Positions 31,134 through 62,100 of a DNA stretch of 64,000 nt are shown piece by piece (the stretch's first letter is position 1; each line of letters starts with the position of its first letter). The notes under the pieces were generated by a model. It was not told the DNA's origin. It saw only the letters and a program-made list of their open reading frames with translations, and searched no databases. The position numbers were made by a program, and so were the translations under genes. The stretch is from IMG/VR virus record IMGVR_UViG_3300025364_000003, positions 1 through 64,000 of that record; one strand, 5' to 3'.

Positions 31134-31459
31134 ATGCCGACGCCGAAACATGACCAAAGAGTAGGAAAGGTGTATATTCTGCGGACAGGGCAGACTTTGG
31201 ACATCAAGACCGATGATGGAATTAGAACAAACCAAAGTTTTGAAGATGATACCAAATTCTTGTTTTTGGGCGTTGGTAAATCGCTCGGAAGACCCTTCAA
31301 GGGAAGATATTTCGGGAAAGGTGCTTCCCAAAAGGTGCTTCCCAAAAGGTTCATCGGTTTCTAGCAGGGGAAAAAATTATCAAAGTGGTAATGTTTTCTT
31401 GTGAGTTTGGGCACAAGTTTAGGCTTTTATATCAACCAAACATGGAAGCAAAATGTTAA
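31134..31459 (+). pseudogene. paralog family A member frameshifted by a 14-bp tandem duplication
   Basis: AAAGGTGCTTCCCA x2 at 31317-31344; removing one copy gives ...VHRFLAGEKIIKV...KC* overlapping the next ATG. Confidence 0.75.
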
Positions 31460-31878
31460 AGTATCTAAAGTCCGCAGAAAAGCTTGCACTTGAACACGAG
31501 TATGATGAATTGTTGGGGTATTACCTCTGTGCCCTTATCGTAAAGGGTGGCAACATCTTGAGTGTTGGCTTCAACAAGAAGTCTACCAATGGATTTGTTG
31601 AGCATTTTGCAGACCTCGTTCGAGGTGAGCGTGACTACTGCCTCTCCACCCATGCTGAGATGGATGCTGTTTTGAGGGCACGAGGCAAGCTTGATCTTCG
31701 GGGAACCAAGATTTATGTGGTTCGTATTAAGCCCTCTGGTGGGCTTGGCATGGCAAAGCCGTGTGAAATTTGCGAACATGTACTTTTCAACTATGGCATC
31801 CGTCGTGCTTATTATTCGATCAATGACAACGAGTACGGTGTTATGAAGGTTGTCAATCCTGCAAAGAGGTATCAGTGA
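31453..31878 (+). CDS. cytidine/dCMP deaminase-superfamily zinc protein
   Basis: THAEMDA ... AKPCEIC. Confidence 0.85.
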   Translation: MLKYLKSAEKLALEHEYDELLGYYLCALIVKGGNILSVGFNKKSTNGFVEHFADLVRGERDYCLSTHAEMDAVLRARGKLDLRGTKIYVVRIKPSGGLGMAKPCEICEHVLFNYGIRRAYYSINDNEYGVMKVVNPAKRYQ

Positions 31879-32264
31879 CATTGTCCCTAGACATAGGAAG
31901 CGTTGCATATCTAGACGAGAATGGATGCTTTCATAAAGCAATAACAGTAGTTTTCAACAATCCAATTATTTTGGCTGGCAAGGGAAGTTTGTGGACAGTT
32001 GTTGATGACGATCCGCTTGAACGGATATTGAGGTTTGTTTCAAACCCAAAAAGCTACTATGTTAGTAACTTTCGTTCTTATGAACAAGAAGGCAATAGCG
32101 CACACTATGCTCGTTATGGTGATACGCTACTATTTCTTGGTGATGTTTTCGAAACTGAAAAAGATAGATTTCTGAAAATGCTGCTTACTCTCAATGAAGA
32201 AAAAACAAGTTATGTACTATGGGGTAATGAAATAGAGTGCTGCAAGTATTTGATGCCCCTGTAA
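31875..32264 (+). CDS. paralog family A member (divergent)
   Basis: LDIGSVAY ... LLFLG ... MLL. Confidence 0.5.
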   Translation: MTLSLDIGSVAYLDENGCFHKAITVVFNNPIILAGKGSLWTVVDDDPLERILRFVSNPKSYYVSNFRSYEQEGNSAHYARYGDTLLFLGDVFETEKDRFLKMLLTLNEEKTSYVLWGNEIECCKYLMPL

Positions 32265-32321
32265 GAATATGCCAAAGCGGATCGAAATCGAAATAAATAA
32301 CCCTCCGACCTGGGAAAGAAA

Positions 32322-32468
32322 ATGCTTGTTCGTATACTTGACTTTCTATCTAATGTTGCCGAAGTTGCCTTTTGGGTGGGAATTGTTCTTATTGTACTTT
32401 CAATCGTCAGCTTTTGCCTAATTGCGTTAGGAGCTTTTGCTCTAATTGCTTTGCTTGCAACTTTCTAA
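32322..32468 (+). CDS. 48-aa membrane peptide
   Basis: MLVRILDFLSNVAEVAFWVGIV...ATF*, almost wholly hydrophobic; below ORF-track cutoff. Confidence 0.5.
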   Translation: MLVRILDFLSNVAEVAFWVGIVLIVLSIVSFCLIALGAFALIALLATF

Positions 32469-32497
32469 AATTAAAATGAAAAACAAATAGAGCAATA

Positions 32498-32773
32498 ATG
32501 ATTAGAGTTGGTGATTTAGTAAAACTAAAAAAGAACAGTCGCAATTTTATTTCAATTCGATTAGTTCACAAAGACAAGTATTCTTATGAAGAAAAAGCCT
32601 ATTTTGTTTCTGAGCCACCTCTTTTGGTTTTGGACATATTCCAGTTGAAACCAGCTCCGCATTTGCATTATGATAGACCTTATAGAGTGAAGGTTCTACA
32701 CGAGGGTAAGATTTGGCTCCTTCGATTCGGCAAGGCTGATTCATTCACTCGTTTCTTTAGAAAGGTAACATAA
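32498..32773 (+). CDS. paralog family A member
   Basis: IRVGDLVKL ... LLVLD ... VLHEGKIW. Confidence 0.65.
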   Translation: MIRVGDLVKLKKNSRNFISIRLVHKDKYSYEEKAYFVSEPPLLVLDIFQLKPAPHLHYDRPYRVKVLHEGKIWLLRFGKADSFTRFFRKVT

Positions 32774-32856
32774 AATGGGTAAAAAGGCTCCGCTACAGAT
32801 GCGCTGGTCAAAGCAAGAGGAGGAATCCGAGCAAGGTAACAATAATTTATAAGCGG

Positions 32857-32885
32857 TTCAGAGAGTCTCTGGTCAATGCTATACT
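32857..32885 (+). promoter_or_regulatory. sigma70-like promoter for the non-coding locus
   Basis: TTCAGA-N17-TATACT with extended TG. Confidence 0.6.
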
Positions 32886-33198
32886 GAACATGTCCTCGAA
32901 ACGAGGTTGAGATTGAAACGCTTGAATCAGCGACACTCTATTAGAGTGTAATGCTAACTGTTATCCTCAAAATAATAATGAAGGAAGGCGATCGCAATGA
33001 AGTAGTTATTTTCCGACTTGGAGTGATTTAATTTTGGAATAGCATTGAATATTTTAGACACTAAACGAGTAAGAAAATGGCAAGAGATTCGCCTTAAGAT
33101 GTTCTTTTTGTTTTATAAAAAACCGGAGCAGTCCTACTGTGGGGTTTCTACTGTGAAGGTTCTATTGATGCTTATGAAGCCCCACTAAAATAAAATCG

Positions 33199-33271
33199 AA
33201 GCCAGTAGTTTACAACAGGAAAAATACCTCATTTTTATGAGGAGACTCCGGTTCAAATCCGGGCTGGTTTC
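33199..33271 (+). tRNA. aberrant tRNA-like element (Lys/TTT-like, 6-nt anticodon loop)
   Basis: AAGCCAG/CTGGTTT acceptor, GTTT/AAAT D stem, CCTCA-TTTTTA-TGAGG, TCCGG-TTCAAAT-CCGGG. Confidence 0.6.
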
Positions 33272-42545: not shown

Positions 42546-42557
42546 TAAGAACATCTT

Positions 42558-42629
42558 GGGGACTTGGTGCTAACGGGAACACGCCGGCTTTGCACGCCGG
42601 AGTTAAGGGTTCGATTCCCTTAGTCTCCA
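42558..42629 (+). tRNA. tRNA-Ala(TGC)
   Basis: GGGGACT/AGTCTCC acceptor with G3:U70, CCGGC-TTTGCAC-GCCGG, AAGGG-TTCGATT-CCCTT, A73. Confidence 0.93.
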
Positions 42630-42654
42630 TAACCTTCTTCTTCGAAACAAAAAC

Positions 42655-43110
42655 GTGATTGAAGATTTGTCTCGCAAAAATGCGGTTATAGCCTTATCAG
42701 GAGCCTTTGACCCCCTGCATATAGGGCACATTAGAATGTGTCAAGGTGCAAGGCACTTTGGTAAAGTTGTAATCATTCTTAATTCAGATCGATGGGTTTT
42801 TGAACGCAAAGGCTATGTTTTAATGCCTTTTGAGCAGCGAAGAGAACTGCTGCTCGCTCTGAGAGATGTTGACGAAGTAGTTGGCGTCGATGATTCGGAT
42901 GGGACTGTTGTCGAAGCTTTAAAACGCATAATGCCAACCGTTTTTGGAAATGGCGGAATTAGAACAAAGGGTAATACGCCCGAGCGACAGTTTTGTTTGG
43001 AGCACGGCATTAAGCTAGTATATGGCATCGGCGGTGGCGAGCGAGAACATATTTCGCTCAACATCGAAGAGAAGATCAGGAATGTCAGCAAACAAGAATG
43101 TCTAAGCTAG
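42655..43110 (+). CDS. cytidylyltransferase-like (HIGH) nucleotidyltransferase, TagD/RfaE-like
   Basis: SGAFDPLHIGH, VIILNSD, MPFEQR, VDEV. Confidence 0.85.
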   Translation: MIEDLSRKNAVIALSGAFDPLHIGHIRMCQGARHFGKVVIILNSDRWVFERKGYVLMPFEQRRELLLALRDVDEVVGVDDSDGTVVEALKRIMPTVFGNGGIRTKGNTPERQFCLEHGIKLVYGIGGGEREHISLNIEEKIRNVSKQECLS

Positions 43111-43373
43111 AAAAGCTCATGCGACCCATCTTTCCAGCTTGCACTTGGGAGCCAGAGTTTGATCTGGGCTACATAAGTTTTTTTGGCAGAGAACTTTCAA
43201 AGAAACTTTATTCGCATGCTGTAGAAGTTCAAGTAGAAGGTCTTGGTAGGCTAATAATTGATGTTGGCATCAATGAAGAAATTTTAGGCATTGAGTCATT
43301 GAATGCAACAAAACATTTTCCCAAATGGGTAATTGCCCAGGCTCAAATCTTGGGTAAGTATCCAAATAAATGA
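43098..43373 (+). CDS. DUF2283-like protein
   Basis: DLGYISF...IIDVGINEEILGIESLNA. Confidence 0.55.
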   Translation: MSKLEKLMRPIFPACTWEPEFDLGYISFFGRELSKKLYSHAVEVQVEGLGRLIIDVGINEEILGIESLNATKHFPKWVIAQAQILGKYPNK

Positions 43374-43379
43374 AAAGGG

Positions 43380-43408
43380 TTGAAATCCCAGAAAGGTTGT
43401 GGTATAAA
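43380..43408 (+). promoter_or_regulatory. sigma70-like promoter for infA (leaderless)
   Basis: TTGAAA-N17-TATAAA, extended TG; ATG after a 6-nt gap. Confidence 0.65.
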
Positions 43409-43414
43409 ACAAAC

Positions 43415-43660: not shown

Positions 43661-44075
43661 AGTTAATACCAATCCTCTTGCAGTTTGCCTCCAATTTGGA
43701 ACAAAGATAGACTTTGCTGTAGGTCAAGTCTATTATGACTTCTCTGGCGAAGAGACGAAGTATTGGCTTGAGGTTGAAAAACCTGGCGATGACATTTCCA
43801 ACGTTATACCAGGCGGCGGGGTGCTCGTCAAGCCCAGGGTATCCAATAGGTTTGGTACCCCACTCTTGTTTCTAGGATGGAAGAACGGAAAACATTTTAT
43901 TACCGAGACCTCGCAACGCCCGGTGAACTATCTTTATTTTTTGTCTGAAGACAAAATCGTAGGCGTTGTTGCTAAGCTGTTACCAATGATGTTTATCACA
44001 CATGTTCAGCTTTGGCCTCACGATGAAACGTTAGTGCATAAAAATGTCTACTATTATAACAAAAAAAATCCGTAG
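43581..44075 (+). CDS. paralog family A member (start uncertain)
   Basis: FAVGQVYY ... LLFLG ... FLSEDKIV. Confidence 0.55.
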   Translation: MSRSRSAHMTSPEESSSTETRNSDSVEVNTNPLAVCLQFGTKIDFAVGQVYYDFSGEETKYWLEVEKPGDDISNVIPGGGVLVKPRVSNRFGTPLLFLGWKNGKHFITETSQRPVNYLYFLSEDKIVGVVAKLLPMMFITHVQLWPHDETLVHKNVYYYNKKNP

Positions 44076-44297
44076 GAAGGTTGGAGCACTCTATAAACTT
44101 GCCAATCCCGATGGCGCCCCCTACCTTTTCGTTTTTCCAAAAGCGCAAATGGAACGTATGGAAAGTTGCAAAAAGCCAATGAGGGCGATCTTGTGCTTTA
44201 CCTTGGAAAACATTCCAAATTTAAGATCAGAGCCATTTGGAATGATTACGTGTGCGCCATAGACGAATTTTTTGTGTCAGAATCAAAGGTAATTTAA
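44044..44297 (+). pseudogene. paralog family A member with 1-nt frameshift
   Basis: RKVGALYKL..YLFVF then -1 frame near T5 run 44132-44136 reads SKSANGTYGKLQKANEGDLVLYLG...KVI* overlapping the next ATG (TAATG). Confidence 0.6.
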
Positions 44298-47394: not shown

Positions 47395-47406
47395 TGGAGT
47401 TACAAA

Positions 47407-47757: not shown

Positions 47758-47758
47758 T

Positions 47759-47788: not shown

Positions 47789-48379
47789 TACCAGGAAATT
47801 TTTTTCTTTTGCCGATGAAACTCCTCAAGCAAGAGGAGTCCAAAAGTATCACTGGAATTGCAAATCACATGTGAAAGTCTGGACCTTGCAAAATTTGCAT
47901 AACTGTCGTTAGGGCCAACTTCAACCCATTTTTTTGAACGAGCATCCCACTCATCTTCGCTGATTTGTTCTGGACCGTCGGTATTATTCCAATACCCATA
48001 TTCTTCAATCCAGTCAATCTGGTCTATCAGCTCTGACAACGAGTCAGAAATGGATGATCGACCCCAGGGGATTATGTAAACATATCCATCATCATGGAAC
48101 CAAACATTTAATCCGCATTCCACAAGATCCATTTGAAACTCCTTGCAGAAGTCTTTTAGAAACTTTGAGGTAATAAACATGCGAATCCGACCTAAGGTCT
48201 GTATCTGGAACTGTTAAACCCTTTGTTCTCTTTTCGATTAATTCGGCTACTTCTGATGAATTCATAGTCTCTTCATAAATCTCATAAGTTTGCTCAAGAA
48301 GAAAGCGATGCATGAGCTTGAGAGACTCTGAGAATCTTAGTTGGGGCACTCGGGCAGCTACATAAATTTTGGTGCTCAT
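47788..48379 (-). pseudogene. probable single gene split by a 1-nt frameshift
   Basis: ORFs 48092-48379 and 47788-48180 join if one base is removed in palindrome GACCTAAGGTC (48189-48199). Confidence 0.5.
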
Positions 48380-49066: not shown

Positions 49067-49369
49067 CTTCTTCGAGAATGGGTACAAGATTGTGGTAATG
49101 CGTCCAGCAAATGCGTGGGTCCACATCTTTTGAAATGATAATTTGAGCAGCCATTACTTGGCCTTTTATTTTAAGCACTTGACCAGTGGTCATTACATTA
49201 GGAGGTGCTGAATCAGTTGTGAACCTGGCAGCGTAATAGCACTGCTCTGGCTTCTCAAAAAGCGTGTATGGACCATCTATTTTATGGATGCCGACGTAGT
49301 TGCTATTTTATGGATGCCGACGTAGTTGGAATCGTATTCTACAACTTCATAAGATGTTGCTTTAGACAT
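49059..49369 (-). pseudogene. hypothetical gene frameshifted by a 26-bp tandem duplication
   Basis: CTATTTTATGGATGCCGACGTAGTTG x2 at 49277-49328; removing one copy restores MSKATSYE...LEEDA* overlapping the next start. Confidence 0.75.
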
Positions 49370-49678: not shown

Positions 49679-49704
49679 ACTTCACCTTCCTATCGAACAA
49701 GCTA

Positions 49705-49977
49705 CTACAAATCGGAAGCAGATTGAACCGCAAGGGCTTTGAGAGCCTTTTTGTACTTATTGCTTCGCATGCAACTTTTACATGTTACCTTTACAGGATC
49801 CTCTGTCCCATAATAAAATGGAGCAACACCTGGCAAGTATTCGGGTGGCTCACATTTCTCTTCAAAGATGTGGTAATCGCAAGCTGCAACATATTGGTCA
49901 GGTCCGCCCGCATATTCTCGCTTGAGTTTTTCAAACGTGAAAAAATGAATAATCACTATTTTCTCCAACCAACCCAT
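49705..49977 (-). CDS. hypothetical protein
   Basis: ORF; VTCKSC. Confidence 0.55.
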   Translation of the reverse strand: MGWLEKIVIIHFFTFEKLKREYAGGPDQYVAACDYHIFEEKCEPPEYLPGVAPFYYGTEDPVKVTCKSCMRSNKYKKALKALAVQSASDL

Positions 49978-50459
49978 GTCTTAGGTGCTTTTTCTTCTTT
50001 TTCGGGTCTTTTAGTGAAGCAATCAAAACAAGGATTGCTCGGCCTATGCCCTTCTTCAAGGCAAATATTTTTCCAAGCTTCCGATTTGTTATAGTAATCA
50101 AGACGCTTGTGACGCTCACAATAATGAATTACGGCATGATACCTATCTACAAAATCAGGCCGAAAAGGAATTGGCGCATAAATGCCTTGAGCAACATCAT
50201 ACCAAATATTTTCATGCTCGTCATTCCAACTCCAAGATGGAGTCATCGAATCATCTGGAAAACTCGACCAATTGCAATAGTAATGGACACCGTCTTCGCC
50301 AAGAGCTTTCCAGCCCTCATAAGTCTTGTCGGGCTCCCAAACGGCTGGAACTTGTCGAGTTTCAACAATTTCAATCAATACAAACTCATCCTCTTCCTCT
50401 GATTGATAAGGAAAGGGCACCTTGTGCAGGATGATCAACCGGCCGATTTGGCTAGACAT
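49956..50459 (-). CDS. hypothetical protein
   Basis: GGAG SD before ATG 50459. Confidence 0.6.
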   Translation of the reverse strand: MSSQIGRLIILHKVPFPYQSEEEDEFVLIEIVETRQVPAVWEPDKTYEGWKALGEDGVHYYCNWSSFPDDSMTPSWSWNDEHENIWYDVAQGIYAPIPFRPDFVDRYHAVIHYCERHKRLDYYNKSEAWKNICLEEGHRPSNPCFDCFTKRPEKEEKAPKTWVGWRK

Positions 50460-50679
50460 TCTTGTTATCTCCATTTTCCATAATTTTTTTAATTGTTTCT
50501 TCTTGGCGAACACGGTTATTTTTTTCAAGTGTGAGCATTTCACGGATAACACCGTTTTCAACGCTTCCGAACAACATGGCAATCGGAATTGCTGCAATGT
50601 ATGCCCAAGCACCACCAGAAGAAATCATAGCAATAGCGAGTATACAAAGAAAAGTGCGCCAAAGAAAAAACATTGTCAA
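50452..50679 (-). CDS. small membrane protein
   Basis: two TM segments. Confidence 0.55.
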   Translation of the reverse strand: MTMFFLWRTFLCILAIAMISSGGAWAYIAAIPIAMLFGSVENGVIREMLTLEKNNRVRQEETIKKIMENGDNKNV

Positions 50680-50900
50680 ATCCTTGCGTAAACAACCATA
50701 CCAAGACCCAAACTGTCCCTGGCCACTGCTGCCGTGAACTTATACCGAAGAAGATCCTCAGCTTCGAGGCGAACAGCAGGGCAGTATGCACCATACATGC
50801 CACGGCCACTATAAGTGTAGTCAACCTCAAGCTCCTGTTCCTCGGCCTCCCGAACAAAGAGCATTTGATTTGCAGTAAGCGTATATCGTTCGTCAGTCAT
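50676..50900 (-). CDS. hypothetical protein, paralog of 49463-49678
   Basis: YSGRGMYGAYCPAV motif. Confidence 0.7.
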   Translation of the reverse strand: MTDERYTLTANQMLFVREAEEQELEVDYTYSGRGMYGAYCPAVRLEAEDLLRYKFTAAVARDSLGLGMVVYARI

Positions 50901-51114
50901 CTCTATTTACCTTCCTTAAAGCAGCGACTGCCCAATCAGCAAGTGTTGCTGCGTCTTCTGCGGCTCCAAGCGCAGAATCAGTTTCGCCACCAACCCATTC
51001 TTGCCAACCGTAACCTTTTGTTTCAGCACGGTCCTTAGCGTCAGCAACAAATTTTGCTGCGAACACAGCAGCCCAAACTTGTTCATCGGTTGGTTTAATT
51101 TTCGGTTCGCTCAT
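50893..51114 (-). CDS. hypothetical protein
   Basis: coupled ORF. Confidence 0.6.
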   Translation of the reverse strand: MSEPKIKPTDEQVWAAVFAAKFVADAKDRAETKGYGWQEWVGGETDSALGAAEDAATLADWAVAALRKVNRDD

Positions 51115-51266
51115 TTCATTTTCTCAAAAGCTTTGACAGCCAGAAAAGACCCCCAAGGAACAAGGCTGCACCAATAACAACCTTGGATCTTTTTGGGAAG
51201 CGCCTATTTGGACGGAAATCTATTCCTCCGTGAGGGTGGATAATATCTCTGGCCGCAAGCTTCATT

Positions 51267-51788
51267 TCATGTTCCGCAAGTTCTGGTGTTGTGCCCAAGG
51301 CCACCACATTTGCCGCATTTATATTGCTTTCGTCGAGAACCTTTGGAAATCTTTCGTTTGACCGTTTCCTTCTCATGGGGGCTGGATATCCCTCCAAGAG
51401 TTTTTGATTTTTTTCGCCCACAAGTGCGAGCATTGTGTCCAGCACAACCGCAATTGCTACAGGTCCGAGTACCTCTCCTGGAGGATTTTACAGTCCTTGT
51501 AGCGCTATTGTTGGCCGAAGACGTCAAGGGCCCGATACGGGCCAAATCCTTTTCTTCGAAGATTCCCTTGGTTTTAGCCTCGTCAAGCATTTCTTTTGGA
51601 CATGGGCCCTCGTCACACATGAAAGCCGACCATTCCCTGCTTGGTCGGCTACTTTCTTCAATTTTGGCCTGACAGGCATCATGACACTTCTTATCACACC
51701 AGAAAAAATACTTGTTTTCTGTGAACTTAGAACGCTTGCTTCCAAGCAAATTTTTATTGCAAAAGAAGCAATGAAAAATATCGATCAT
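51267..51788 (-). CDS. zinc-knuckle (CCHC) protein
   Basis: CSNCGCAGHNARTC and CGKCGGLGHNTRTC plus N-terminal CxxC/CxxxC. Confidence 0.75.
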   Translation of the reverse strand: MIDIFHCFFCNKNLLGSKRSKFTENKYFFWCDKKCHDACQAKIEESSRPSREWSAFMCDEGPCPKEMLDEAKTKGIFEEKDLARIGPLTSSANNSATRTVKSSRRGTRTCSNCGCAGHNARTCGRKKSKTLGGISSPHEKETVKRKISKGSRRKQYKCGKCGGLGHNTRTCGT

Positions 51789-51964
51789 GCCTCCTCCAAA
51801 ATCTTCAACATTTTGAGCGAATGCTCCAATTCGCTAACAATGTTAGCTCGACAATTCTCGCTGTGGATGTCATCCTCTTGAAAACTCATATCATTGGCGC
51901 ATTCAAGAGCCAGCGTCAACGCCTGGCGAACATCTTCGAGAATTTTGGTTTCTCCCTTGGTCAT
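51785..51964 (-). CDS. 59-aa hypothetical protein (leaderless)
   Basis: MTKGETKILEDVRQAL...EEA*; stop overlaps next ATG; below ORF-track cutoff. Confidence 0.6.
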   Translation of the reverse strand: MTKGETKILEDVRQALTLALECANDMSFQEDDIHSENCRANIVSELEHSLKMLKILEEA

Positions 51965-51970
51965 GAACCA

Positions 51971-52054
51971 AATCTATCACAGGAATATGGTGTTTTCAAC
52001 CCATTTTAAAAAAGTCTGTTCGGAGTTTAAACCGAGGTCGAAATACGATATATT
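51971..52054. promoter_or_regulatory. divergent sigma70-like promoter pair
   Basis: minus: TTGAAA-N17-TAGATT (51971-51999); plus: TTTAAA-N17-TATATT (52026-52054). Confidence 0.6.
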
Positions 52055-52080
52055 CTGTATGTAGGGAAAGGAAGCATACA

Positions 52081-52683
52081 GTGACCATTGCACCGCCAAA
52101 GGCGATGAATGCCCGAGGATCCAAGTCCAAAGGTCGTTCTCGAAATACAAAGCGACCGAAAAAGGTTCCTCGCCAGACTTCTGGCCTTCGTGGTCAGATT
52201 AATACTTGGATGGCTGAAGCATTTGAAGCCATGGGCGCACCCGAGTTAATTGATCAGGTTCCGTGGAATTTGAACAAGCGGATGACTTCCGCAAGAGGTC
52301 GTGCAGGATGCACTTGGAAGGACGGCAAGGCTTGCGAGCTTTTCATGGAATTTTCGTTGAGCCTGTTCAAGCTTTCGGACGAAGATGGTCGGCGTCAGTG
52401 TGTATTTCACGAGTGCGCACATATTGTCGACTATCACAAGGGAACTTATGTTAAAGGTCAGCCGCACGGGATTTCTTGGAAATCCTACATGGCAAGTGTT
52501 GGCGTCGAGGCCAAGCGTTGTCATAACGTTCAGCCTGTGAAGCAACGCAGAACGAAAAAATGGAAAGCATCTTGTGCTTGTAAGGTGTGGGAAATCTCCT
52601 CTCAACGCCGACGAAAGATGAAGTTGGGCGAAGCTTCTTACAAATGTAAGAAGTGTGGTGAAAAACTAGCCCTGGAAAGGTAA
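52081..52683 (+). CDS. SprT-like zinc metalloprotease
   Basis: RMTSARGRA, FHECAH (HExxH), HGISWK, C-terminal zinc ribbon. Confidence 0.85.
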   Translation: MTIAPPKAMNARGSKSKGRSRNTKRPKKVPRQTSGLRGQINTWMAEAFEAMGAPELIDQVPWNLNKRMTSARGRAGCTWKDGKACELFMEFSLSLFKLSDEDGRRQCVFHECAHIVDYHKGTYVKGQPHGISWKSYMASVGVEAKRCHNVQPVKQRRTKKWKASCACKVWEISSQRRRKMKLGEASYKCKKCGEKLALER

Positions 52684-52691
52684 AATGCGTC

Positions 52692-53129
52692 ATGCCTGCC
52701 GAGAAAAATGATGAGCTTATTTTCAAGCATCCGGTTCTTGCTGATCTCCGAGACATCTCGGAGATTGATCGAGTCAAAATTAAGCATGCTGACTTCAACA
52801 CGGGCTGCATTATCGTTACGATTGACGGCGAAGATATTTCGTTTGAGGGGGTAATGCGCTCATTGAGGTTTGTTGATCTTCTGGAAAAGATGGAAGTTCA
52901 GGCTGTGGATTTTGAGACGGGTGAAATTACTGTCCGTTGGCATCCCAAGGGCGCACCTAAGGTGTACGCCCACCTCAATATTAGCCAGGCCGAGATTGAT
53001 TCCATCAAGGCTGGAAACAAGATTTATGCAATCAAGTTAGCTAGGGCCCGAACTGGTTTGGGGCTAGCGGATGCTAAGAAGCTCATCGAGGATGCCGCTG
53101 ATGAACTTAGGCGACGAGGACTGTTGTAA
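52692..53129 (+). CDS. protein with C-terminal ribosomal protein bL12 CTD-like domain
   Basis: GNKIYAIKLARARTGLGLADAKKLIE. Confidence 0.7.
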   Translation: MPAEKNDELIFKHPVLADLRDISEIDRVKIKHADFNTGCIIVTIDGEDISFEGVMRSLRFVDLLEKMEVQAVDFETGEITVRWHPKGAPKVYAHLNISQAEIDSIKAGNKIYAIKLARARTGLGLADAKKLIEDAADELRRRGLL

Positions 53130-53188
53130 TAGCTTCAAAAAGGCTATGCAGCCTTGTAGGCTTGACTTCCTATAACGTAGGAGATAAA

Positions 53189-53614
53189 ATGCGCAAGGCT
53201 GCATGTATATTACTAATTCGACCAGATGGCCGAATTTTAGGCGCCTCTCGGCGGAATAGCCTGATTGACTTCAATCTTGTTGGGGGTAAGGTCGATTCTG
53301 GCGAATCTGTCAGGGAAGCTGCTGTCAGAGAGTTTGCCGAAGAAACGGGGACTTATCTATCTACAAATAATCTAATAGAGGTTTTCACTCATCCGTGTTA
53401 TGGTGAAGCTGACTACGAAACTACTACATTTTTAGTTTATCAACAGCTCGATTTGGCAGCCCAGCAAATTCCTGAAAATCCCAATTGCCCTGAGGATGGC
53501 ATACTAATCAAGTGGATCACTTGGAACGACCTACTGGGACCCAATTCTTCATTTAGAGAATATAATCAGTTGCTTTATAATAAGATTTCTCATTTATTAG
53601 AGGATAAACCATGA
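53189..53614 (+). CDS. NUDIX hydrolase
   Basis: GGKVDSGESVREAAVREFAEETG Nudix box. Confidence 0.9.
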   Translation: MRKAACILLIRPDGRILGASRRNSLIDFNLVGGKVDSGESVREAAVREFAEETGTYLSTNNLIEVFTHPCYGEADYETTTFLVYQQLDLAAQQIPENPNCPEDGILIKWITWNDLLGPNSSFREYNQLLYNKISHLLEDKP

Positions 53615-54231
53615 AACAGTATCCTTCAATTCCAACCAAACCCAAAGGCAATTGTACTGCCTTTTGGGTTTTTGATAAATTGGATGGTTCCAATATTAGA
53701 GTTGAGTGGACTTCCAAGCGTGGTTTTAATAAGTTTGGAACTCGCAAGCGACTACTTGGTTCAGATCAGGGAATCCTTACACGAGCTGAGGTGCTCGCAA
53801 ACACTCAGGAAAAGACCTTCAGGAGCATTTTTACTCAAAACAAGATTGATAAAGCAATTTGTTTTTTTGAGTTTTGGGGACCTAATTCTTTTGCTGGTTC
53901 ACACAAGGAAAACGACGATCATAAGCTTACACTGATTGATGTTGACGTTTATAAGCAAGGCATGATTCCTCCAAATAGGTTTTTAGAGCTGTTCGATCCG
54001 ACTCCAGTCAACACACCAAATTTCATCCATTATGGGCTTGTTGATGAAGAATTTAAGAATCAAGTTCGCAAAGGTGAGGTTAACGGTGTAACCTTTGAAG
54101 GTGTCGTTTGCAAAGCTTATAACAAGCGTAAACGCAACACCGAAATGTTTAAAATCAAATCCGAAGCATGGATCGCAGCTGTTAAAGCCAAGTATGGGCA
54201 CAATCCAAATCTCTTGGAACAAATTCTATAA
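53611..54231 (+). CDS. minimal ATP-dependent RNA-ligase-like nucleotidyltransferase
   Basis: motif I KLDGSN, III FFEFWG, IIIa LIDV, IV EGVV, V KIK. Confidence 0.75.
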   Translation: MKQYPSIPTKPKGNCTAFWVFDKLDGSNIRVEWTSKRGFNKFGTRKRLLGSDQGILTRAEVLANTQEKTFRSIFTQNKIDKAICFFEFWGPNSFAGSHKENDDHKLTLIDVDVYKQGMIPPNRFLELFDPTPVNTPNFIHYGLVDEEFKNQVRKGEVNGVTFEGVVCKAYNKRKRNTEMFKIKSEAWIAAVKAKYGHNPNLLEQIL

Positions 54232-54254
54232 CAATCCCAGAAGAAACCCCTAAT

Positions 54255-55385
54255 ATGAAAGATTTTTATCAAATTTTAGGCGTCTCAAAAGATGCCTCGG
54301 AAAAGGAAATAAAAAAAGCTTACCGAGCCAAAGCTATGGAATTTCATCCGGATCGCAATCCAAATGATCCAGAAGCCGAAGAAAGATTTAAAGAAGTTCA
54401 AACGGCTTACGAGACTCTCAAAGATCCACAAAAGCGTCAAGTTTACGATATGGGTGGTTCACACCCTAGAGCCGGGTGGAATGTTGGCGGATTTGACCCT
54501 TTCAATCCTTTTGATTTTGGAATGGGAGACAATGAAATCAATGATGTGATTAATGATTTCTTTAGACGGGGAGGTGCTCAAGCGCATAGAAAAGCTAGAC
54601 GAACCATGCCTGGCAAAGATATTGGTTTAACTGTTTCACTCACGCTCGAAGAAGTCCTCACGGGTTGTTCCAAAAATATAACTATCACCCGCAAGGAACG
54701 TTGCGGCACTTGTGATGGCTCGGGTGCCAAAAATGAACCTGGGGGGATGGCGAAGTGCATGCAATGTCATGGTTCGGGTCAAGTTGGTCGTAGAAATGGA
54801 TTTATGCACGTCATTACCACCTGCCCTCACTGTTCTGGCCTTGGCGAATATATCGCCAAACCTTGTAATTCCTGTTTGGGAAATAAGACATTTGACAAAA
54901 ACGAACAGATCAACATAAAGATCCCCAAGGGGGTTCGTTCAGGCAACACGCTTCGTATTTCAAACAAGGGACATGATTCCACTGATAAAGACGAAAAACC
55001 TGGCCACCTTTATGTAGAAATTTCGGTTCTTGAACATCCTGTGTTCAAACATGATAATGATGAATTATATCTCGAACTAAAGATTCCTTACACCGTTGCA
55101 GTTCTTGGCGGTGAGATCAATGTTCCAGTTCTTGGTAAAAAGCCCGGAGAACGGTCAACCATCAAGGTTAACCTACCAAATGGCATTTCACAAAAAAAGG
55201 TTTTGGAAATAGAGGAAAGAGGGCTTCCGAACATCAGATCGGGCAAACGTGGCTTGCAGATTGTCAATCTAACGGTTCACATTCCATCCGCTGATGAACT
55301 CAATGATCGTCAAAAGGAGCTTTTGCAAGAATTGCATGAAAGCGTAGATAGCTCATGGTTAGAAGATTGGTTAGAAAATGAGTGA
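54255..55385 (+). CDS. dnaJ: molecular chaperone DnaJ (full length)
   Basis: J domain with HPD, G/F region, four CxxCxGx(G/K) repeats, C-terminal domain. Confidence 0.95.
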   Translation: MKDFYQILGVSKDASEKEIKKAYRAKAMEFHPDRNPNDPEAEERFKEVQTAYETLKDPQKRQVYDMGGSHPRAGWNVGGFDPFNPFDFGMGDNEINDVINDFFRRGGAQAHRKARRTMPGKDIGLTVSLTLEEVLTGCSKNITITRKERCGTCDGSGAKNEPGGMAKCMQCHGSGQVGRRNGFMHVITTCPHCSGLGEYIAKPCNSCLGNKTFDKNEQINIKIPKGVRSGNTLRISNKGHDSTDKDEKPGHLYVEISVLEHPVFKHDNDELYLELKIPYTVAVLGGEINVPVLGKKPGERSTIKVNLPNGISQKKVLEIEERGLPNIRSGKRGLQIVNLTVHIPSADELNDRQKELLQELHESVDSSWLEDWLENE

Positions 55386-57755: not shown

Positions 57756-58087
57756 AAATAAGAGATGTCGATTCCAGGTTTGTTGAAGTCCCAATGGAAA
57801 TACTGACATCTTATTCTGAAGTCAATTCGGAAATATTTAGGGATTGGCTTCAACTGCGAGATTGTAAAGCAGGTAGTTTGTTTTCATCAAAAGATGAGTT
57901 GCGCTTTAATCAACGCCATATTGGTAAAGGTGACATAGTCATGATTATAAGCGCTACGTTTACGGTGGTGAAAGCACAAAAAGTTTGGGCCGAATTTATC
58001 TTCCTGCATGAAGATCATGTTCATACCATAGAGATTCCGGTAACAAACTGGCAAGCTTGGTTCACTCCTCTTAAAAATGAAGCCTGA
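57752..58087 (+). CDS. paralog family A member
   Basis: CKAGSLF ... IVMII ... FLHEDHV. Confidence 0.6.
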   Translation: MKIRDVDSRFVEVPMEILTSYSEVNSEIFRDWLQLRDCKAGSLFSSKDELRFNQRHIGKGDIVMIISATFTVVKAQKVWAEFIFLHEDHVHTIEIPVTNWQAWFTPLKNEA

Positions 58088-58307
58088 AGTAAAAATAGGC
58101 AAGATTTACGAACTAAGAATTCCTCCTCACGAATCACATGAAGGCAAATATGTGATCGTAACGGAAATTATTCCTTGTTCAGTGACATTCGACAAGCGGC
58201 CAACTTATAATTTTCATTTGCTTTAGGGCGAAAAAATTATTGTCAAACACACGACTGAAGATTTTTTCTTTGCATGGTTTAAAGAAGCGAGTAATAGTAA
58301 TGATTAA
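58077..58307 (+). pseudogene. paralog family A member with in-frame TAG
   Basis: MKPEVKIGKIYEL...FHLL*GEKIIV...ND*; TAG at 58224-58226. Confidence 0.65.
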
Positions 58308-58618: not shown

Positions 58619-58942
58619 ATGGGCATTTCATCCGAAAATTGGTTCCCTCCTTCGTATTCATCTGAGCTGGTAACTAAGCTAAAAGCTAAAAATCAAGATT
58701 CTTGTTTTGCTCCACCATGGAAGAAAACACACTGTTATCATCGAGCTGTTCCTGGTTTTAGTCCAGAATTACAATGCAAGAGAAATCCAGTTTGGTGGCA
58801 CCCAGATTGCGTGGATGCCTATTGTGATTTTCATGTGACCACAAGAATGAAAAAGTACATGCGGGCAAAGTGGGCTCGTAGCTTATATCAAATGACAATA
58901 GATGAAATCTGTTTAGCCTATCCTCATATCACGCTTTTCTAA
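58619..58942 (+). CDS. Trp/Cys-rich paralog family B member
   Basis: WFPPSYSSEL ... C ... WWHP ... YCDFH ... W. Confidence 0.65.
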   Translation: MGISSENWFPPSYSSELVTKLKAKNQDSCFAPPWKKTHCYHRAVPGFSPELQCKRNPVWWHPDCVDAYCDFHVTTRMKKYMRAKWARSLYQMTIDEICLAYPHITLF

Positions 58943-59298
58943 TGAATAAAAAATACAAATCATCTGTAAACTTTTCCCCGCCCAATTTTTGGACCCCTCC
59001 CAGGTATACAAGAGAGTATGCACAACATATTGCTGAAAGAATTAGCTATTACCACGACGTGGTACTGCATTCCAAAATAGAGTTTCCGTTGTACAGGGGT
59101 ACAAAACTAACATGCAGCAACGGTTATTGTAAATCAAATTCGGATGACATTTGGTGGACCCCGATAAAAAGCGAAAGCTCATACTGTTCAGCATGTGCAA
59201 CACCAAATTATAAATCTAGCGTATATCGCCAATGGCTAATAACCAGCTATTTCTACTTTCTGGACAATAAAGGCTTATTAGAGAAGTTTGTCAAATAA
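58942..59298 (+). CDS. paralog family B member
   Basis: WTPPRYTRE ... WWTP ... YCSAC ... W. Confidence 0.65.
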   Translation: MNKKYKSSVNFSPPNFWTPPRYTREYAQHIAERISYYHDVVLHSKIEFPLYRGTKLTCSNGYCKSNSDDIWWTPIKSESSYCSACATPNYKSSVYRQWLITSYFYFLDNKGLLEKFVK

Positions 59299-59318
59299 AC
59301 ACTAAGGAGATAAACGAG

Positions 59319-59713
59319 ATGACGCAAACAAGCCAAGTGACCAAATTGGTTCCAGAAAATTGGTCACCTCCCAAGTGGTCCAAGGAATTAATGAAAGAGT
59401 TTCATGATTTAATGTTGCCACATATGAAATATGATAACCACAGACACAAAATTCAATTCTTAAATCAAAAGCCTCTTTGCGTCGTCAAAAAAGCAAAAAC
59501 CTCGCCACTGGTATCATTTGAGTACAATTACATTCCTTGTAACAAGGACCTTGTAACAAGGATGGAGTTTGGTGGGCTCCTGTTGTTACAGATACTTATT
59601 GCGAAGAGTGTATTGATTATTTTCTCAAAGATATTTTTTACACCATTTGGCAGCAAATAAAAGTGGAGCTTACCTATTGTCGTCTTAACAAATTTTGGCG
59701 GCTCCATGAGTAA
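59319..59713 (+). pseudogene. paralog family B member frameshifted by a 14-bp tandem duplication
   Basis: CCTTGTAACAAGGA x2 at 59535-59562; removing one copy restores CNKDGVWWAPVVTDTYCEEC...LHE*. Confidence 0.8.
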
Positions 59714-59984
59714 GCAAGATTTAGCAACCAAACGAATGGATATATACAAAGCCAAGCCTGGTATGTTGGTTGTAAACCAAACATGGCTTTCGTGTCTTGA
59801 TCATAACAATTTGAAAATTCAGCTCACCCCCTACAAACTTATGCTTCTGGTCAGTGTTGAGGTTTTCATATATAAAAATCGCTGTTACGTTCGAAGCGAC
59901 ATTCTGTTAGAAGAAAAAGTTTATCGGCTTCTCGAACTAAGCAAAGAAAAATGGAATGAAAGTTTTAGAATAGTCTTACCATGA
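59706..59984 (+). CDS. paralog family A member
   Basis: AKPGMLVV ... LMLLV ... LLEEKVY. Confidence 0.6.
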   Translation: MSKQDLATKRMDIYKAKPGMLVVNQTWLSCLDHNNLKIQLTPYKLMLLVSVEVFIYKNRCYVRSDILLEEKVYRLLELSKEKWNESFRIVLP

Positions 59985-60184
59985 ACAAAGAAATGACTAT
60001 GGATTTTAAAATCAAATGCAATGCCGATGGATGCAATCATAGTGCAGACTTCTTCCAAATAAAAAAAACTTGTACTAGCTTTTATTGCTCTGAGCACGCC
60101 CCTTCAAAACTAAGACGACAATACCAACGAAAAAAGAGATATAATTTGATTCTAAGCAGAATTAATGAAGGTACAATAAAATAA
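59981..60184 (+). CDS. small Cys/His protein (family B-like)
   Basis: CNADGC ... FYCSEH. Confidence 0.5.
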   Translation: MNKEMTMDFKIKCNADGCNHSADFFQIKKTCTSFYCSEHAPSKLRRQYQRKKRYNLILSRINEGTIK

Positions 60185-60225
60185 ATGATATTAGCACCAA
60201 TATGCTTGATTGAAAAAAGATAATC

Positions 60226-60534
60226 ATGGATATTCTCTCAGAACCAGATTGGAGACCACCAAAAATAAGCAGTGAACTGCTTATCAAAATAAAGCCGTTC
60301 ATCCATGATTATGAATATTTCATGGCTACCGAACATAAATGCCAACACTTTGTCTCTACCGTAGATGAAAAATATGAATGTCACAATGAAATAACTTGGT
60401 GGTGCCCACAGTCAGGCGATTGCTTTTGCGAAGAACATGTCACCTCAGGATTAACCAATTTTCTAAAACAACAATGGCGATGGATTCGATATCAATACTT
60501 TATCAAAGAAATCTTTCCTAAACTTAAGAAATAA
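60226..60534 (+). CDS. paralog family B member
   Basis: WRPPKISSEL ... WWCP ... FCEEH ... W. Confidence 0.7.
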   Translation: MDILSEPDWRPPKISSELLIKIKPFIHDYEYFMATEHKCQHFVSTVDEKYECHNEITWWCPQSGDCFCEEHVTSGLTNFLKQQWRWIRYQYFIKEIFPKLKK

Positions 60535-60565
60535 CCATTTCTTATAAGTTTTTGGCGCCCCCCAT

Positions 60566-60889
60566 ATGACATATCATCCCAATATCCTCCAGAAAAATAA
60601 ACACAACATATGGACCCCTCCCAAGTGGTCCAATGAACTAATACTCTGGTGTGAACAATACTCCTCCATCTCAGATTACCTAAAGTTCTCCCCACCCCAC
60701 TGCTCAGCTTGTAACTCATACCCCATATGGTGGTTCCCACAGACTTATATCGCCTACTGCCAAAAACACGCAGACAAAGGTTGGGTCTCCCTATGTTCCA
60801 AAGTCTGGTTCCAAACCCTCTATGAATTCAACCTCTTCCTACTAACAAAAGAAGGGAAAATACCACATGACCCATATGCCAAACTGTAA
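60566..60889 (+). CDS. paralog family B member
   Basis: WTPPKWSNEL ... WWFP ... YCQKH ... W. Confidence 0.7.
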   Translation: MTYHPNILQKNKHNIWTPPKWSNELILWCEQYSSISDYLKFSPPHCSACNSYPIWWFPQTYIAYCQKHADKGWVSLCSKVWFQTLYEFNLFLLTKEGKIPHDPYAKL

Positions 60890-60900
60890 ACTGCACACAA

Positions 60901-61167
60901 ATGAAAATTGCACTTATAAGTTTCATCAAATACAACATACTAAACCCTAACAATAGACCACTAGTAGAACTACCCTCCTGTATCAATAAACTTAGCCTCA
61001 CTAAACATATAGGTCACATTTGGTGGCAACCCTTCTCAGATATCGCTGTATGACAAAATCATCTCGATAACGTCCATAAATCCTGGTTCTATACCAAATG
61101 GTTACTACTCAAATATCATAGAACTCTAACACATATTCAAGAAATATTCCACTCCTACTACCAATAA
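60901..61167 (+). pseudogene. paralog family B member with in-frame TGA at the conserved Cys
   Basis: IWWQPFSDIAV*QNH versus IWWFPQTYIAYCQKH in the neighbour; TGA 61051-61053. Confidence 0.65.
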
Positions 61168-61375
61168 CTTCTCTAACAAAAGACACATAATTTTTTTCAT
61201 AACAATTTCTATATTCCGTCAGATGAGGTTTTTTAAAGAATGTTTACTTTTGGCCTGTTATGTGCGATTATGAGGCAAGAGAGGGTACTGAGGGGGTTTT
61301 GAGAGAGCTTTAGGGGTGCTTTAGGGGTAATACCCCTTCACGGAACGATTCTCATGGGAAAACGAAAACGTTGAT
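61168..61375. other. non-coding strand-skew switch point; candidate replication origin or genome terminus
   Basis: C-rich/G-poor to the left, G-rich/C-poor to the right; GCTTTAGGGGT x2 and palindrome AGGGGTA-A-TACCCCT. Confidence 0.45.
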
Positions 61376-62020
61376 ATGGATACAAAAACGCACATTTTGA
61401 CTCGATCTCTCCCTAAGGGGGAAACAACTTTGGGGGAGTCATCTTCTGGGGGATTTGCATCAACTAGTAGTTCTGGTTCTACTGTGGTATTGAAGGATTA
61501 TCGTCCTAGGTGGTCCAATCATCTTTTTGGTCCGGGTACATTGGTAGAGACGAGGCACAGTTATGGTGGTAAGGGATTGGTTAGGAGGGTGAGTCAGTAT
61601 CCTGGGTTAATGAAGAGGGGGTATGGGACTGAACATGCTATTGAGTTTAGTTGGTATGTGAGGATGGACTCATCTGTTCTACCTGAGGGAGAAGAGATGT
61701 TGTTGGGCAGGATAAGGGAAATTGCGTATCAGGATGGTGGTCGGGAGCCATTGAGGTTTCCTGATTCTCCTTATAGTGCGAAGTTGGTACCGGTTGGTGC
61801 CCTGGGTATGGTGGTGACTTATGTTAGGGTGGGGAGAACATTTACATTTCTTGAAGAAGAATTTCTTCCTTCGTTGGATGACCCAAATTTCTATATTGTT
61901 TACTTTCAGGAATACCTTGACATTGTTAAAGCAGGACTTTATTTGGTTCCTGTAAAAGAAACAAAAAAAGCGAAAGAAAGAACTTCTTATGAAGAAGGTT
62001 TAGAGATTAGTGTTTGGTAA
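61376..62020 (+). CDS. hypothetical protein (family A-like C-terminal part)
   Basis: FGPGTLVE ... LGMVV ... YIVYF. Confidence 0.55.
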   Translation: MDTKTHILTRSLPKGETTLGESSSGGFASTSSSGSTVVLKDYRPRWSNHLFGPGTLVETRHSYGGKGLVRRVSQYPGLMKRGYGTEHAIEFSWYVRMDSSVLPEGEEMLLGRIREIAYQDGGREPLRFPDSPYSAKLVPVGALGMVVTYVRVGRTFTFLEEEFLPSLDDPNFYIVYFQEYLDIVKAGLYLVPVKETKKAKERTSYEEGLEISVW

Positions 62021-62041
62021 ACAAAAGAAAGAATATTAAAG

Positions 62042-62100
62042 AAAAAAGCATGACAACCAATTAAGGTGTCATGCAATTAAGGTGTCATGCTTTTCTTTTG
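62042..62100. terminator. bidirectional terminator containing a 16-bp tandem duplication
   Basis: AAAAAAGCATGACA...TGTCATGCTTTT; CAATTAAGGTGTCATG x2 at 62058-62089; convergent genes. Confidence 0.75.

What the first reader, a model, noticed from the sequence alone, without database searches (positions are those of the whole stretch)
31314..62090. Hairpin-associated tandem duplications and point lesions that break only accessory genes
Seen: exact two-copy duplications of 14 bp (31317, at GGGAA-N6-TTCCC), 26 bp (49277), 14 bp (59535, palindrome TCCTTGT-A-ACAAGGA), 16 bp (62058, terminator) and 41 bp (5385, hairpin); three frameshift otherwise well-coupled ORFs. Further 1-nt shifts (~2308, ~44134, ~48194 in palindrome GACCTAAGGTC) and nonsense codons (58224, 61051). 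More than 20 kb of structural and replication ORFs are intact. Inference: real mutations filtered by selection rather than random sequencing error; duplications can revert by precise deletion, so they may be ON/OFF switches generated at hairpins, possibly through Mre11-Rad50 cutting and fill-in.
Basis: partly seen in the sequence, partly recalled or inferred. Interest (0 to 1): 0.6.

Follow-up and report, generated by a model that had tools for sequence, protein, structure and literature searches.

The report
Real small duplications and pseudogenes, megaphage
The short tandem duplications, frameshifts and stop codons are genuine and fixed in a ~461-kb uncultivated phage from a salt-lake microbial mat: they are decaying accessory genes, not sequencing errors and not demonstrable on/off switches, and only a few intergenic repeats change copy number between samples.

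Summary
The window is the first 64 kb of a 206.5-kb IMG/VR record. It is a fragment of a ~461-kb megaphage from the Hot Lake (Washington) hypersaline mat.

**Observation.** All five listed duplications are exact and at the stated coordinates. Up to 13 contigs per site, from at least five assembly pipelines, carry the same two-copy alleles, the same TAG at 58224 and TGA at 61051, and the same sequence at the proposed 1-nt shifts at 44134 and 48194. Assembler or sequencing error is therefore excluded.

**Gene breakage.**
- The 14-bp duplication at 59535 splits one member of a small Cys-rich paralog array.
- The TGA at 61051 sits on that family's conserved Cys column.
- Coding statistics support the breaks at 49277, 2308, 44134 and 58224.
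- 31317 is weaker and 48194 is inconclusive.
- The broken ORFs at 31317, 44134, 48194 and 49277 lie in segments absent from a related phage. Core structural genes are full length.

**Switching.** No gene-breaking duplication varies between assemblies. The sites that do vary are:
- an 11-bp repeat at 61307 (x2 or x3);
- the 42-bp insertion at 5385 (x1 or x2);
- a 17-bp repeat at 98129 in the record, outside the window (x2 or x3);
- a 12-bp in-frame indel at 2257.

**Hairpins.** Four of 11 duplications overlap a strong hairpin. Two copy a whole hairpin end to end without microhomology.

**Verdict.** This is ordinary pseudogene decay plus variable-number repeats. The Mre11-Rad50 idea is untested.

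The parts
5385..5467 (+). 41-bp hairpin unit (10-bp stem, 21-nt loop) present twice with one filler A between the copies. It spans the TyrRS stop codon and the start codon of the next gene, and both genes stay intact. Polymorphic: one copy in ENA ERZ27249355.
31317..31344 (+). 14-bp exact tandem duplication flanked by a 6-nt direct repeat (AAAGGT), the slippage type. It shifts ORF 31068-31364 out of the frame that ends at 31459. Identical in 12 contigs.
31068..31459 (+). ORFan split by the 31317 duplication (frame 0, then frame 2). It has no homolog in the related phage L004 and no family hit. The break is likely but only weakly supported.
49277..49328 (-). 26-bp exact tandem duplication with no microhomology and no notable hairpin. 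It breaks a minus-strand ORFan of about 100 aa (about 49390 to 49059). Identical in 7 contigs.
58640..61131 (+). Array of seven small Cys-rich paralogous ORFs (N-terminal W.PP.WS.EL, C-terminal WW.P...YC..H). Two members are broken.
   Evidence: (A1)
59535..59562 (+). 14-bp exact tandem duplication equal to the 15-nt perfect palindrome minus its first base, with no microhomology. It splits paralog 59319-59713: the N-terminal half is in frame 0 and the conserved C-terminal half in frame 2. Two copies in all 10 contigs and in the metagenome scan.
61051..61053 (+). TGA at the conserved Cys column of paralog 60901-61131. Identical in all spanning contigs.
58224..58226 (+). In-frame TAG in ORF 58077-58307. 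Coding signal continues for 26 codons after it, and the read-through frame would overlap the next start at 58300.
61307..61328 (+). 11-bp unit x2 here and x3 in other samples. It abuts a 7-bp-stem hairpin and ends 47 nt upstream of the start of ORFan 61376-62020. This is the one clearly variable repeat inside the finding's span.
62058..62089 (+). 16-bp exact duplication of the loop and 3' arm of the terminator hairpin after gene 61376-62020. Intergenic. Identical in 13 contigs.
2226..2551 (+). Small membrane-protein ORF whose coding signal moves from frame 0 to frame 2 near 2308. It also carries a 12-bp in-frame deletion at 2257 that is specific to this record.
44044..44297 (+). Small ORF whose coding signal moves from frame 1 to frame 0 near 44134. 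It lies in a 630-bp segment absent from relative L004. Identical in 6 contigs.
48189..48199 (-). Palindrome GACCTAAGGTC in the 41-nt overlap of ORFs 48092-48379 and 47788-48132. The proposed 1-nt shift could not be confirmed.
24451..28716 (+). Mre11/SbcD-like phosphoesterase fused to SbcC/Rad50, interrupted by an intein-like insert.

Best explanation
The window belongs to a ~461-kb uncultivated megaphage from the Hot Lake hypersaline mat.

Between its conserved genes lie flexible islands of ORFans and paralog arrays. These accumulate ordinary spontaneous mutations: short exact tandem duplications, 1-nt indels and nonsense substitutions.

Where such a mutation hits a dispensable gene it is tolerated and becomes fixed, leaving a pseudogene. 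In indispensable genes only in-frame duplications survive. Elsewhere duplications survive in intergenic DNA.

The duplications arise by replication or repair errors:
- Some arise by classical slippage between short direct repeats (31317, and 70658 in the record).
- Some arise at hairpins, where the copied unit is the hairpin itself (5385, 59535).

Once a unit is duplicated it behaves as a variable-number repeat that gains and loses copies. This is seen only at the intergenic sites 61307, 5385 and 98129.

Shown: the lesions are real, they are fixed, they sit in accessory DNA, paralogs prove two of the breaks, and three repeats vary in copy number.

Inferred: neutrality, and the molecular mechanism of duplication.
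For: - **Identity of the genome.** The record is 206,528 bp with CheckV completeness 45%. Near-identical contigs of 460,987 to 461,086 bp exist in other assemblies. The samples are Hot Lake mat sections (PMC5812542).
- **Agreement between assemblies.** Sequence is identical at all lesions except the variable repeats.
- **Proof of breakage.** Paralog alignment A1 and tblastn.
- **Frame-specific coding scores**.
- **Accessory location.** Synteny with relative L004 puts the broken ORFs at 31, 44, 48 and 49 kb in segments that relative lacks.
- **Core genes** are full length against relatives.
- **In-frame versus out-of-frame pattern**.
- **Microhomology per duplication**: 6 nt at 31317, 7 nt at 70658, 0-2 nt elsewhere.
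- **Hairpin statistics**.
Against: - No read-level data were available, so low-frequency reversion is not excluded.
- Loss of function is inferred from reading frames only. Truncated products could still work.
- Most duplications have 0-1 nt of microhomology, which simple slippage explains poorly.
- The density of duplications is about 7-fold above the control, and 6 of 11 fall within 31-65 kb. That is higher than I would expect from neutral decay alone.
- The control loci are mainly structural modules, so the comparison is imperfect.
Confidence: 0.74

Rival explanations
1. Reversible ON/OFF switches. The gene-breaking duplications are gained and lost at high rate, so accessory genes phase-vary within the phage population.
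For: - Exact tandem duplications can in principle collapse precisely. Reversible microhomology-mediated tandem duplications are documented in yeast and E. coli (PMC8639346).
- Three other repeats in this genome do vary in copy number between samples.
Against: - The three gene-breaking duplications are two-copy in every contig that spans them: 12, 7 and 10 contigs.
- This includes the somewhat diverged ERZ27249355 strain, which differs at 5385, 61307 and 98129.
- No one-copy contig for 59535 turned up in the JGI metagenome contig scan.
- The nonsense codons and 1-nt shifts in neighbouring genes are not reversible by this route. They point to decay.
Confidence: 0.1
2. Structure-specific cutting and fill-in. 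A nuclease makes staggered nicks at the base of a hairpin or cruciform; it could be the phage Mre11-Rad50-like protein or a junction resolvase. The 5' overhangs are filled in and the ends are ligated, which duplicates the hairpin without needing microhomology.
For: - Two duplications (5385, 59535) equal a whole hairpin to within 1 nt at both ends. Null probability is 0.0007 to 0.0011 per event, so P is about 3e-5 to 7e-5 for 2 of 11.
- Most duplications have 0-1 nt of microhomology.
- The 5385 junction carries one extra A that extends the stem.
- The nuclease is encoded and intact.
Against: - Seven of 11 duplications have no notable hairpin.
- The stems are short (7-12 bp). SbcCD action in vivo is established for much longer palindromes (own knowledge).
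- Hairpins are enriched in intergenic DNA, where insertions are tolerated. Against an intergenic null the overlap test is only P = 0.076.
- There is no experimental link to any nuclease.
Confidence: 0.12
3. Assembly or sequencing artefact. Contigs break at inverted repeats and are rejoined with a duplicated overlap, or indel errors create false frameshifts.
For: Some duplications sit at hairpins, where de Bruijn graphs tangle. Logan contigs do end inside the 41-bp repeat at 5385.
Against: - The same alleles come from at least five pipelines and many libraries.
- Units of 11-26 bp are shorter than the k-mers used, so they are read through directly.
- Copy-number differences are consistent within allele classes (7 versus 6 fetched contigs at 61307).
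Confidence: 0.02
4. Programmed recoding. The frameshifts and stops are decoded by ribosomal frameshifting, readthrough or an alternative genetic code.
For: - A tRNA-like gene with a 6-nt anticodon loop lies at 33199-33271.
- Some huge phages recode stop codons (own knowledge).
Against: - None of the 8 tRNAs is a suppressor.
- Long genes are open under code 11.
- Insertions of 14 and 26 bp cannot be bypassed by known frameshift signals.
- There are only two in-frame stops, of different kinds (TAG and TGA).
Confidence: 0.02

Closest known systems
Microhomology-mediated tandem duplications (MTDs) (PMC8639346; PMC13167724; found)
   Same: Short exact tandem duplications that can expand into repeats. 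Selection depletes them from coding sequence, and they are in principle reversible. 31317 (6-nt flank) and 70658 (7-nt flank) fit this structure.
   Different: Most duplications here have 0-1 nt of microhomology. The gene-breaking ones are fixed at consensus level rather than visibly subclonal.
Simple-sequence contingency loci / variable-number repeats in bacterial promoters and ORFs (own knowledge)
   Same: The 11-bp repeat at 61307 varies (x2 or x3) between mm-scale sections of one mat and lies just upstream of a gene. 5385 and 98129 also vary.
   Different: There are only 1-3 copies rather than long tracts. No effect on expression has been shown. The variable sites are intergenic and do not toggle a reading frame.
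Quasipalindrome / hairpin-templated mutagenesis and SbcCD processing of palindromes (own knowledge)
   Same: - The lesions coincide with hairpins.
- A filler base makes the 5385 stem longer.
- In one assembly the loop of the 61307 hairpin reads as its own reverse complement.
   Different: The classical events are templated substitutions, small frameshifts, deletions or inverted duplications. They are not direct duplications of the whole hairpin.
Pseudogenes in multigene families of large DNA viruses and phages (own knowledge)
   Same: Tandem paralog arrays in which some members carry frameshifts or stops.
   Different: This is an uncultivated megaphage, and the family has no match in Pfam or PHROGs.

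Membership tests
Microhomology-mediated tandem duplication | Exact head-to-tail duplication of a short segment | tested here: met
Microhomology-mediated tandem duplication | The ancestral segment is bounded by a direct repeat of about 4 nt or more | tested here: not met
   Extra match beyond one unit: 6 nt at 31317 and 7 nt at 70658, but 0 nt at 49277, 59535, 61307 and 204845 and 1 nt at 62058 and 64195. It is met for 2 events and not for the majority.
Microhomology-mediated tandem duplication | Subclonal and frequently reverting | tested here: inconclusive
   Consensus contigs show no one-copy allele at 31317, 49277 or 59535. No reads were available.
Phase-variable contingency locus | Repeat copy number varies within one population | tested here: met
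   61307 is x2 in 6 fetched contigs plus this record and x3 in 7 (8 counting L066). 5385 is x1 in one contig and x2 in 6 fetched contigs. 98129 is x2 in one contig and x3 in 5 loci, one of them this record. It is not met for the three gene-breaking duplications.
Phase-variable contingency locus | The copy change switches a gene's reading frame or its promoter | not testable with these tools
   The variable repeats are intergenic. No sigma-70-like promoter spans 61307. No expression data are available.
Pseudogene | Reading frame disrupted relative to intact homologs | tested here: met
   59535 and 61051 against five paralogs. The others rest on coding statistics only.
Pseudogene | The lesion is fixed rather than a sequencing error | tested here: met
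Pseudogene | No functional product | not testable with these tools
   No transcript or protein data are available.
Mre11-Rad50/SbcCD-dependent hairpin processing | The genome encodes the nuclease | tested here: met
   ORF 24451-28716 carries Metallophos and SbcC domains.
Mre11-Rad50/SbcCD-dependent hairpin processing | Event boundaries coincide with hairpin structure | tested here: inconclusive
   Two of 11 duplications equal a whole hairpin (P about 3e-5 to 7e-5). Four of 11 overlap a stem of 7 bp or more (P = 0.017, or 0.076 against an intergenic null). Seven of 11 have none.
Mre11-Rad50/SbcCD-dependent hairpin processing | The events depend on the nuclease | not testable with these tools
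   This needs genetics in a cultivated system.
Stop-codon recoding / programmed frameshift | A suppressor tRNA, or genome-wide in-frame stops of one kind | tested here: not met
   There are 8 tRNAs and none is a suppressor. Long ORFs are open under code 11.

The most novel reading that the evidence does not exclude
A subset of the duplications records a distinct break-and-fill-in pathway: a structure-specific nuclease nicks both strands at the base of a hairpin, and fill-in plus ligation duplicates the whole hairpin without microhomology. The resulting intergenic repeats (61307, 5385, 98129) would then serve as contingency loci that tune expression of accessory genes in a megaphage population.
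Probability: 0.1. Interest if true: 0.65.

Novelty: new member of a known kind. Interest (0 to 1): 0.33.

Why it matters
- **Annotation.** A very large phage genome can carry a cluster of fixed pseudogenes and young tandem duplications in its flexible islands. Automatic gene calls there are fragments, so huge-phage 'ORFans' need care.
- **Selection on phage genome content.** The pattern suggests selection is relaxed on this accessory DNA.
- **Strain markers.** The copy-number-variable repeats are ready-made markers for tracking strains of this phage within the mat.
- **Mutational signature.** Whole-hairpin duplications without microhomology are a small but concrete signature. It could be looked for across genomes.
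- **Limit.** None of this changes current understanding unless the switching or nuclease hypotheses are shown experimentally.

Tried and rejected
- **Reads.** Independent assemblies fetched with the look-up of encoding contigs served instead.
- **INPHARED phages.** No DNA or protein match.
- **The 461-kb record.** It is not held for whole-record search.
- **Exact-protein look-up of ORF 48743-49123.** Not on record; a neighbouring gene was used instead.
- **Pfam and PHROGs on all broken fragments and both paralog families.** Nothing above threshold.
- **Self-tblastn for paralogs of the fragments at 31, 44, 48, 49 and 2.3 kb.** None found.
- **The search for homologous proteins on the 48-kb ORF.** Only itself, so the shift at 48194 stays open.
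- **ESM Atlas on gene 61376-62020.** No usable lead.
- **Visual similarity among ORFs 57752, 58077 and 58300.** BLAST did not confirm it, so I do not claim a second paralog family.
- **Genome-wide scan for in-frame stops by coding score.** Too noisy to use, so I give no genome-wide census of point lesions.
- **Shared motif in the repeat units.** They are not a regulatory motif reused elsewhere in the genome.
- **First hairpin-boundary test.** It was done on the duplicated sequence and was redone on single-copy reconstructions.

Full report
**What the window is**

The window is bases 1-64000 of a 206,528-bp IMG/VR virus record with CheckV completeness 45%. The record is JGI 3300025364, Ga0208354_1000002.

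Near-identical contigs of 460,987 to 461,086 bp exist in four other assemblies. The full genome is therefore about 461 kb.

One of the sample numbers appears in the data statement of a paper on the Hot Lake (Washington) hypersaline phototrophic mat. That mat was cut into five 1-mm sections, and each section was assembled with IDBA-UD (PMC5812542).

INPHARED holds nothing similar.

The window encodes:
- a capsid and structural block at 6.8-21.9 kb, with many IMG/VR relatives;
- a Mre11-like/Rad50 fusion with an intein-like insert;
- a tyrosyl-tRNA synthetase and several tRNAs;
- dCMP deaminase, a SpoU methylase, DnaJ, an RNA ligase and homing endonucleases.

**Checking the observation**

All four simple duplications are exact at the stated coordinates. 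The 5385 case is a 41-bp hairpin present twice with one extra A between the copies.

The whole record holds 11 such events with a unit of 11 bp or more:

| Position | Unit (bp) | Copies in this record | Location |
|---|---|---|---|
| 5385 | 41 + 1 | 2 | window |
| 31317 | 14 | 2 | window |
| 49277 | 26 | 2 | window |
| 59535 | 14 | 2 | window |
| 61307 | 11 | 2 | window |
| 62058 | 16 | 2 | window |
| 64195 | 15 | 2 | record only |
| 70658 | 12 | 2 | record only |
| 98129 | 17 | 3 | record only |
| 123772 | 21 | 3 | record only |
| 204845 | 21 | 2 | record only |

Chance predicts about 0.05 events. Related phage loci totalling 1.02 Mb hold 7. Those loci are mainly structural modules, so they are an imperfect control.

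**Real or artefact**

I therefore fetched independent assemblies by exact-protein look-up and one metagenome pattern scan. They come from IDBA-UD, older and newer JGI pipelines, MEGAHIT (ENA) and Logan.

I aligned them to the record and tabulated alleles.

Invariant sites:

| Site | Copies | Fetched loci with this allele |
|---|---|---|
| 31317 | 2 | 12 |
| 49277 | 2 | 7 |
| 59535 | 2 | 10 |
| 62058 | 2 | 13 |
| 64195 | 2 | 11 |
| 123772 | 3 | 5 |

Some of the invariant-site counts include loci cut from this record itself (L001 and L078 at 31317, L103 at 123772). The TAG at 58224 and the TGA at 61051 are identical in every contig that spans them. So is the sequence at the proposed shifts at 44134 and 48194. 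Sequencing or assembly error is excluded.

**Do the lesions break genes**

The region 58.6-61.1 kb is an array of small Cys-rich paralogs.
- In alignment A1 the frame-0 piece before the 59535 duplication aligns to the family's N-terminal half. The frame-2 piece after it aligns to the conserved C-terminal half.
- tblastn with an intact paralog hits the two pieces in different frames.
- The TGA at 61051 falls exactly on the conserved Cys column.

For the other sites I used a codon log-odds score trained on this genome's long ORFs.
- 49277: coding signal moves from frame 1 to frame 2.
- 2308: it moves from frame 0 to frame 2.
- 44134: it moves from frame 1 to frame 0.
- 58224: it continues in frame for 26 codons after the TAG, at a level off-frames never reach.
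- 31317: the signal after the break is weak.
- 48194: the two frames cannot be told apart, and the ORF has no relatives. That item stays open.

With one copy, each of the three split ORFs would end in a 7-8-nt overlap with the next start.

**Accessory or core**

Compared with a related phage (L004, 82% identical deaminase), four of the broken ORFs lie in segments that relative lacks:
- upstream of 31450;
- 43660-44285;
- 46684-53192.

For the 58.6-61.1 kb paralog array and the ORF at 2.3 kb, no such comparison was possible. Their accessory status rests on being ORFans.

None of the broken ORFs has a Pfam or PHROG match.

The six structural proteins and the Rad50-like protein align end to end with relatives.

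Duplications inside otherwise intact genes are 12 and 21 bp, so in frame. The out-of-frame ones are in ORFans, intergenic DNA or gene junctions.

**Switching**

Copy number does vary, but elsewhere. The loci counted below are the fetched loci tabulated.

| Site | Allele A | Allele B | Notes |
|---|---|---|---|
| 61307 (11 bp) | x2 in 6 fetched contigs plus this record | x3 in 7 (8 counting L066) | x3 in mat section 1; x2 in sections 3 and 5 |
| 5385 (42-bp insertion) | x2 in 6 fetched contigs plus this record (L083 also two-copy) | absent in one ENA assembly | |
| 98129 (17 bp) | x3 in 5 fetched loci, one of them this record | x2 in the same ENA sample | |
| 2257 (12 bp, in frame) | missing only in this record | present in all others | |

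Apart from a poly-C length change outside the window, these are the only indel differences seen. Single-base differences between fetched contigs are rare, at most a few per locus.

All are intergenic or in frame. The gene-breaking duplications predate the split between these strains and show no reversion at consensus level. I therefore read them as pseudogene lesions and not as switches. Rare revertants remain untested.

**Hairpins and mechanism**

Strong hairpins overlap 4 of the 11 duplications: 5385, 59535, 61307 and 62058.
- P = 0.017 against random positions.
- P = 0.076 against intergenic positions.

Two duplications (5385, 59535) copy a hairpin end to end to within 1 nt. Random segments do this 0.07-0.11% of the time, so P is about 3e-5 to 7e-5.

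Only 31317 and 70658 have flanking direct repeats of 6-7 nt, as slippage requires. The rest have 0-2 nt.

The extra A at the 5385 junction lengthens the stem. In one assembly the loop of the 61307 hairpin reads as its own reverse complement.

These details suggest that hairpin formation took part in some events. Seven events have no hairpin.

I commit to mixed replication and repair errors. Slippage is shown by structure for two events. Hairpin involvement is likely for four. The enzyme is unknown.

**Comparison with known systems and verdict**

- Microhomology-mediated tandem duplications are the closest described class (PMC8639346, PMC13167724). Their defining microhomology is missing in most events here.
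- Contingency-locus behaviour fits only the intergenic repeats, and any effect on expression is untested.
- Recoding is not supported: there is no suppressor tRNA and long ORFs are open under code 11.

The finding is a correct and careful observation of an ordinary process in a novel megaphage. The whole-hairpin duplication signature is a minor point of real interest.

Noticed in passing
window 24451-28716 (+): A 1421-aa protein joins an N-terminal Mre11/SbcD-like metallophosphoesterase to SbcC/Rad50. It is interrupted by an insert of about 340 aa with LAGLIDADG/intein-type hits. Relatives have 1078-1080 aa without the insert.
   Followed up: partly
window 33199-33271 (+): A tRNA-like gene (RF00005, 42 bits) whose anticodon loop has only 6 nt (UUUUUA), so ARAGORN cannot name it. 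It is either a damaged accessory tRNA or an unusual decoder. It lies in an 835-bp gene-free gap that carries several strain SNPs.
   Followed up: partly
window 61323-61337, locus L066: In assembly 3300025348 the loop of the hairpin next to the 11-bp repeat reads ATT instead of AAT, which is the reverse complement of the loop. This could be a hairpin 'flip' or a plain substitution.
   Followed up: no
G000 123772-123836 (outside the window; locus L103): A 21-bp unit is present three times. It contains the stop codon of a Cpn60-like chaperonin gene and the ATG of the next gene, so it is a duplicated gene junction like 5385. It is constant in 5 contigs.
   Followed up: partly
G000 97447-97472 (outside the window; locus L109): An intergenic G8-T-C5-T-C11 tract whose poly-C run is one base shorter in the ENA ERZ27249355 strain. 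It lies downstream of a sigma-70-like factor gene.
   Followed up: no
window 4106-5397, 42557-43660, 52692-55385: A large set of translation- and proteostasis-related cargo: tyrosyl-tRNA synthetase, tRNA-Arg x2, tRNA-Ala, an eIF-1A/S1-like protein, an L7/L12-like protein and DnaJ. SpoU methylase, NUDIX, RNA ligase and SprT-like genes are also present.
   Followed up: no
window 9210-11410 (-) and about 44960-45584 (+): Homing-endonuclease genes: HNH, a 617-aa DUF7487/HNH-type protein directly beside the major capsid gene, and a LAGLIDADG gene beside the SpoU methylase. The last is absent from relative L004.
   Followed up: no
window 120-1403 (+): A 427-aa ORF matches only the C-terminal polymerase part of family-A DNA polymerases. 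The polymerase may be split into separate genes in this phage.
   Followed up: no
window 2257: This record alone lacks 12 bp (4 codons, in frame) of a small membrane-protein ORF that all other assemblies have. The deletion lies between short direct repeats.
   Followed up: yes
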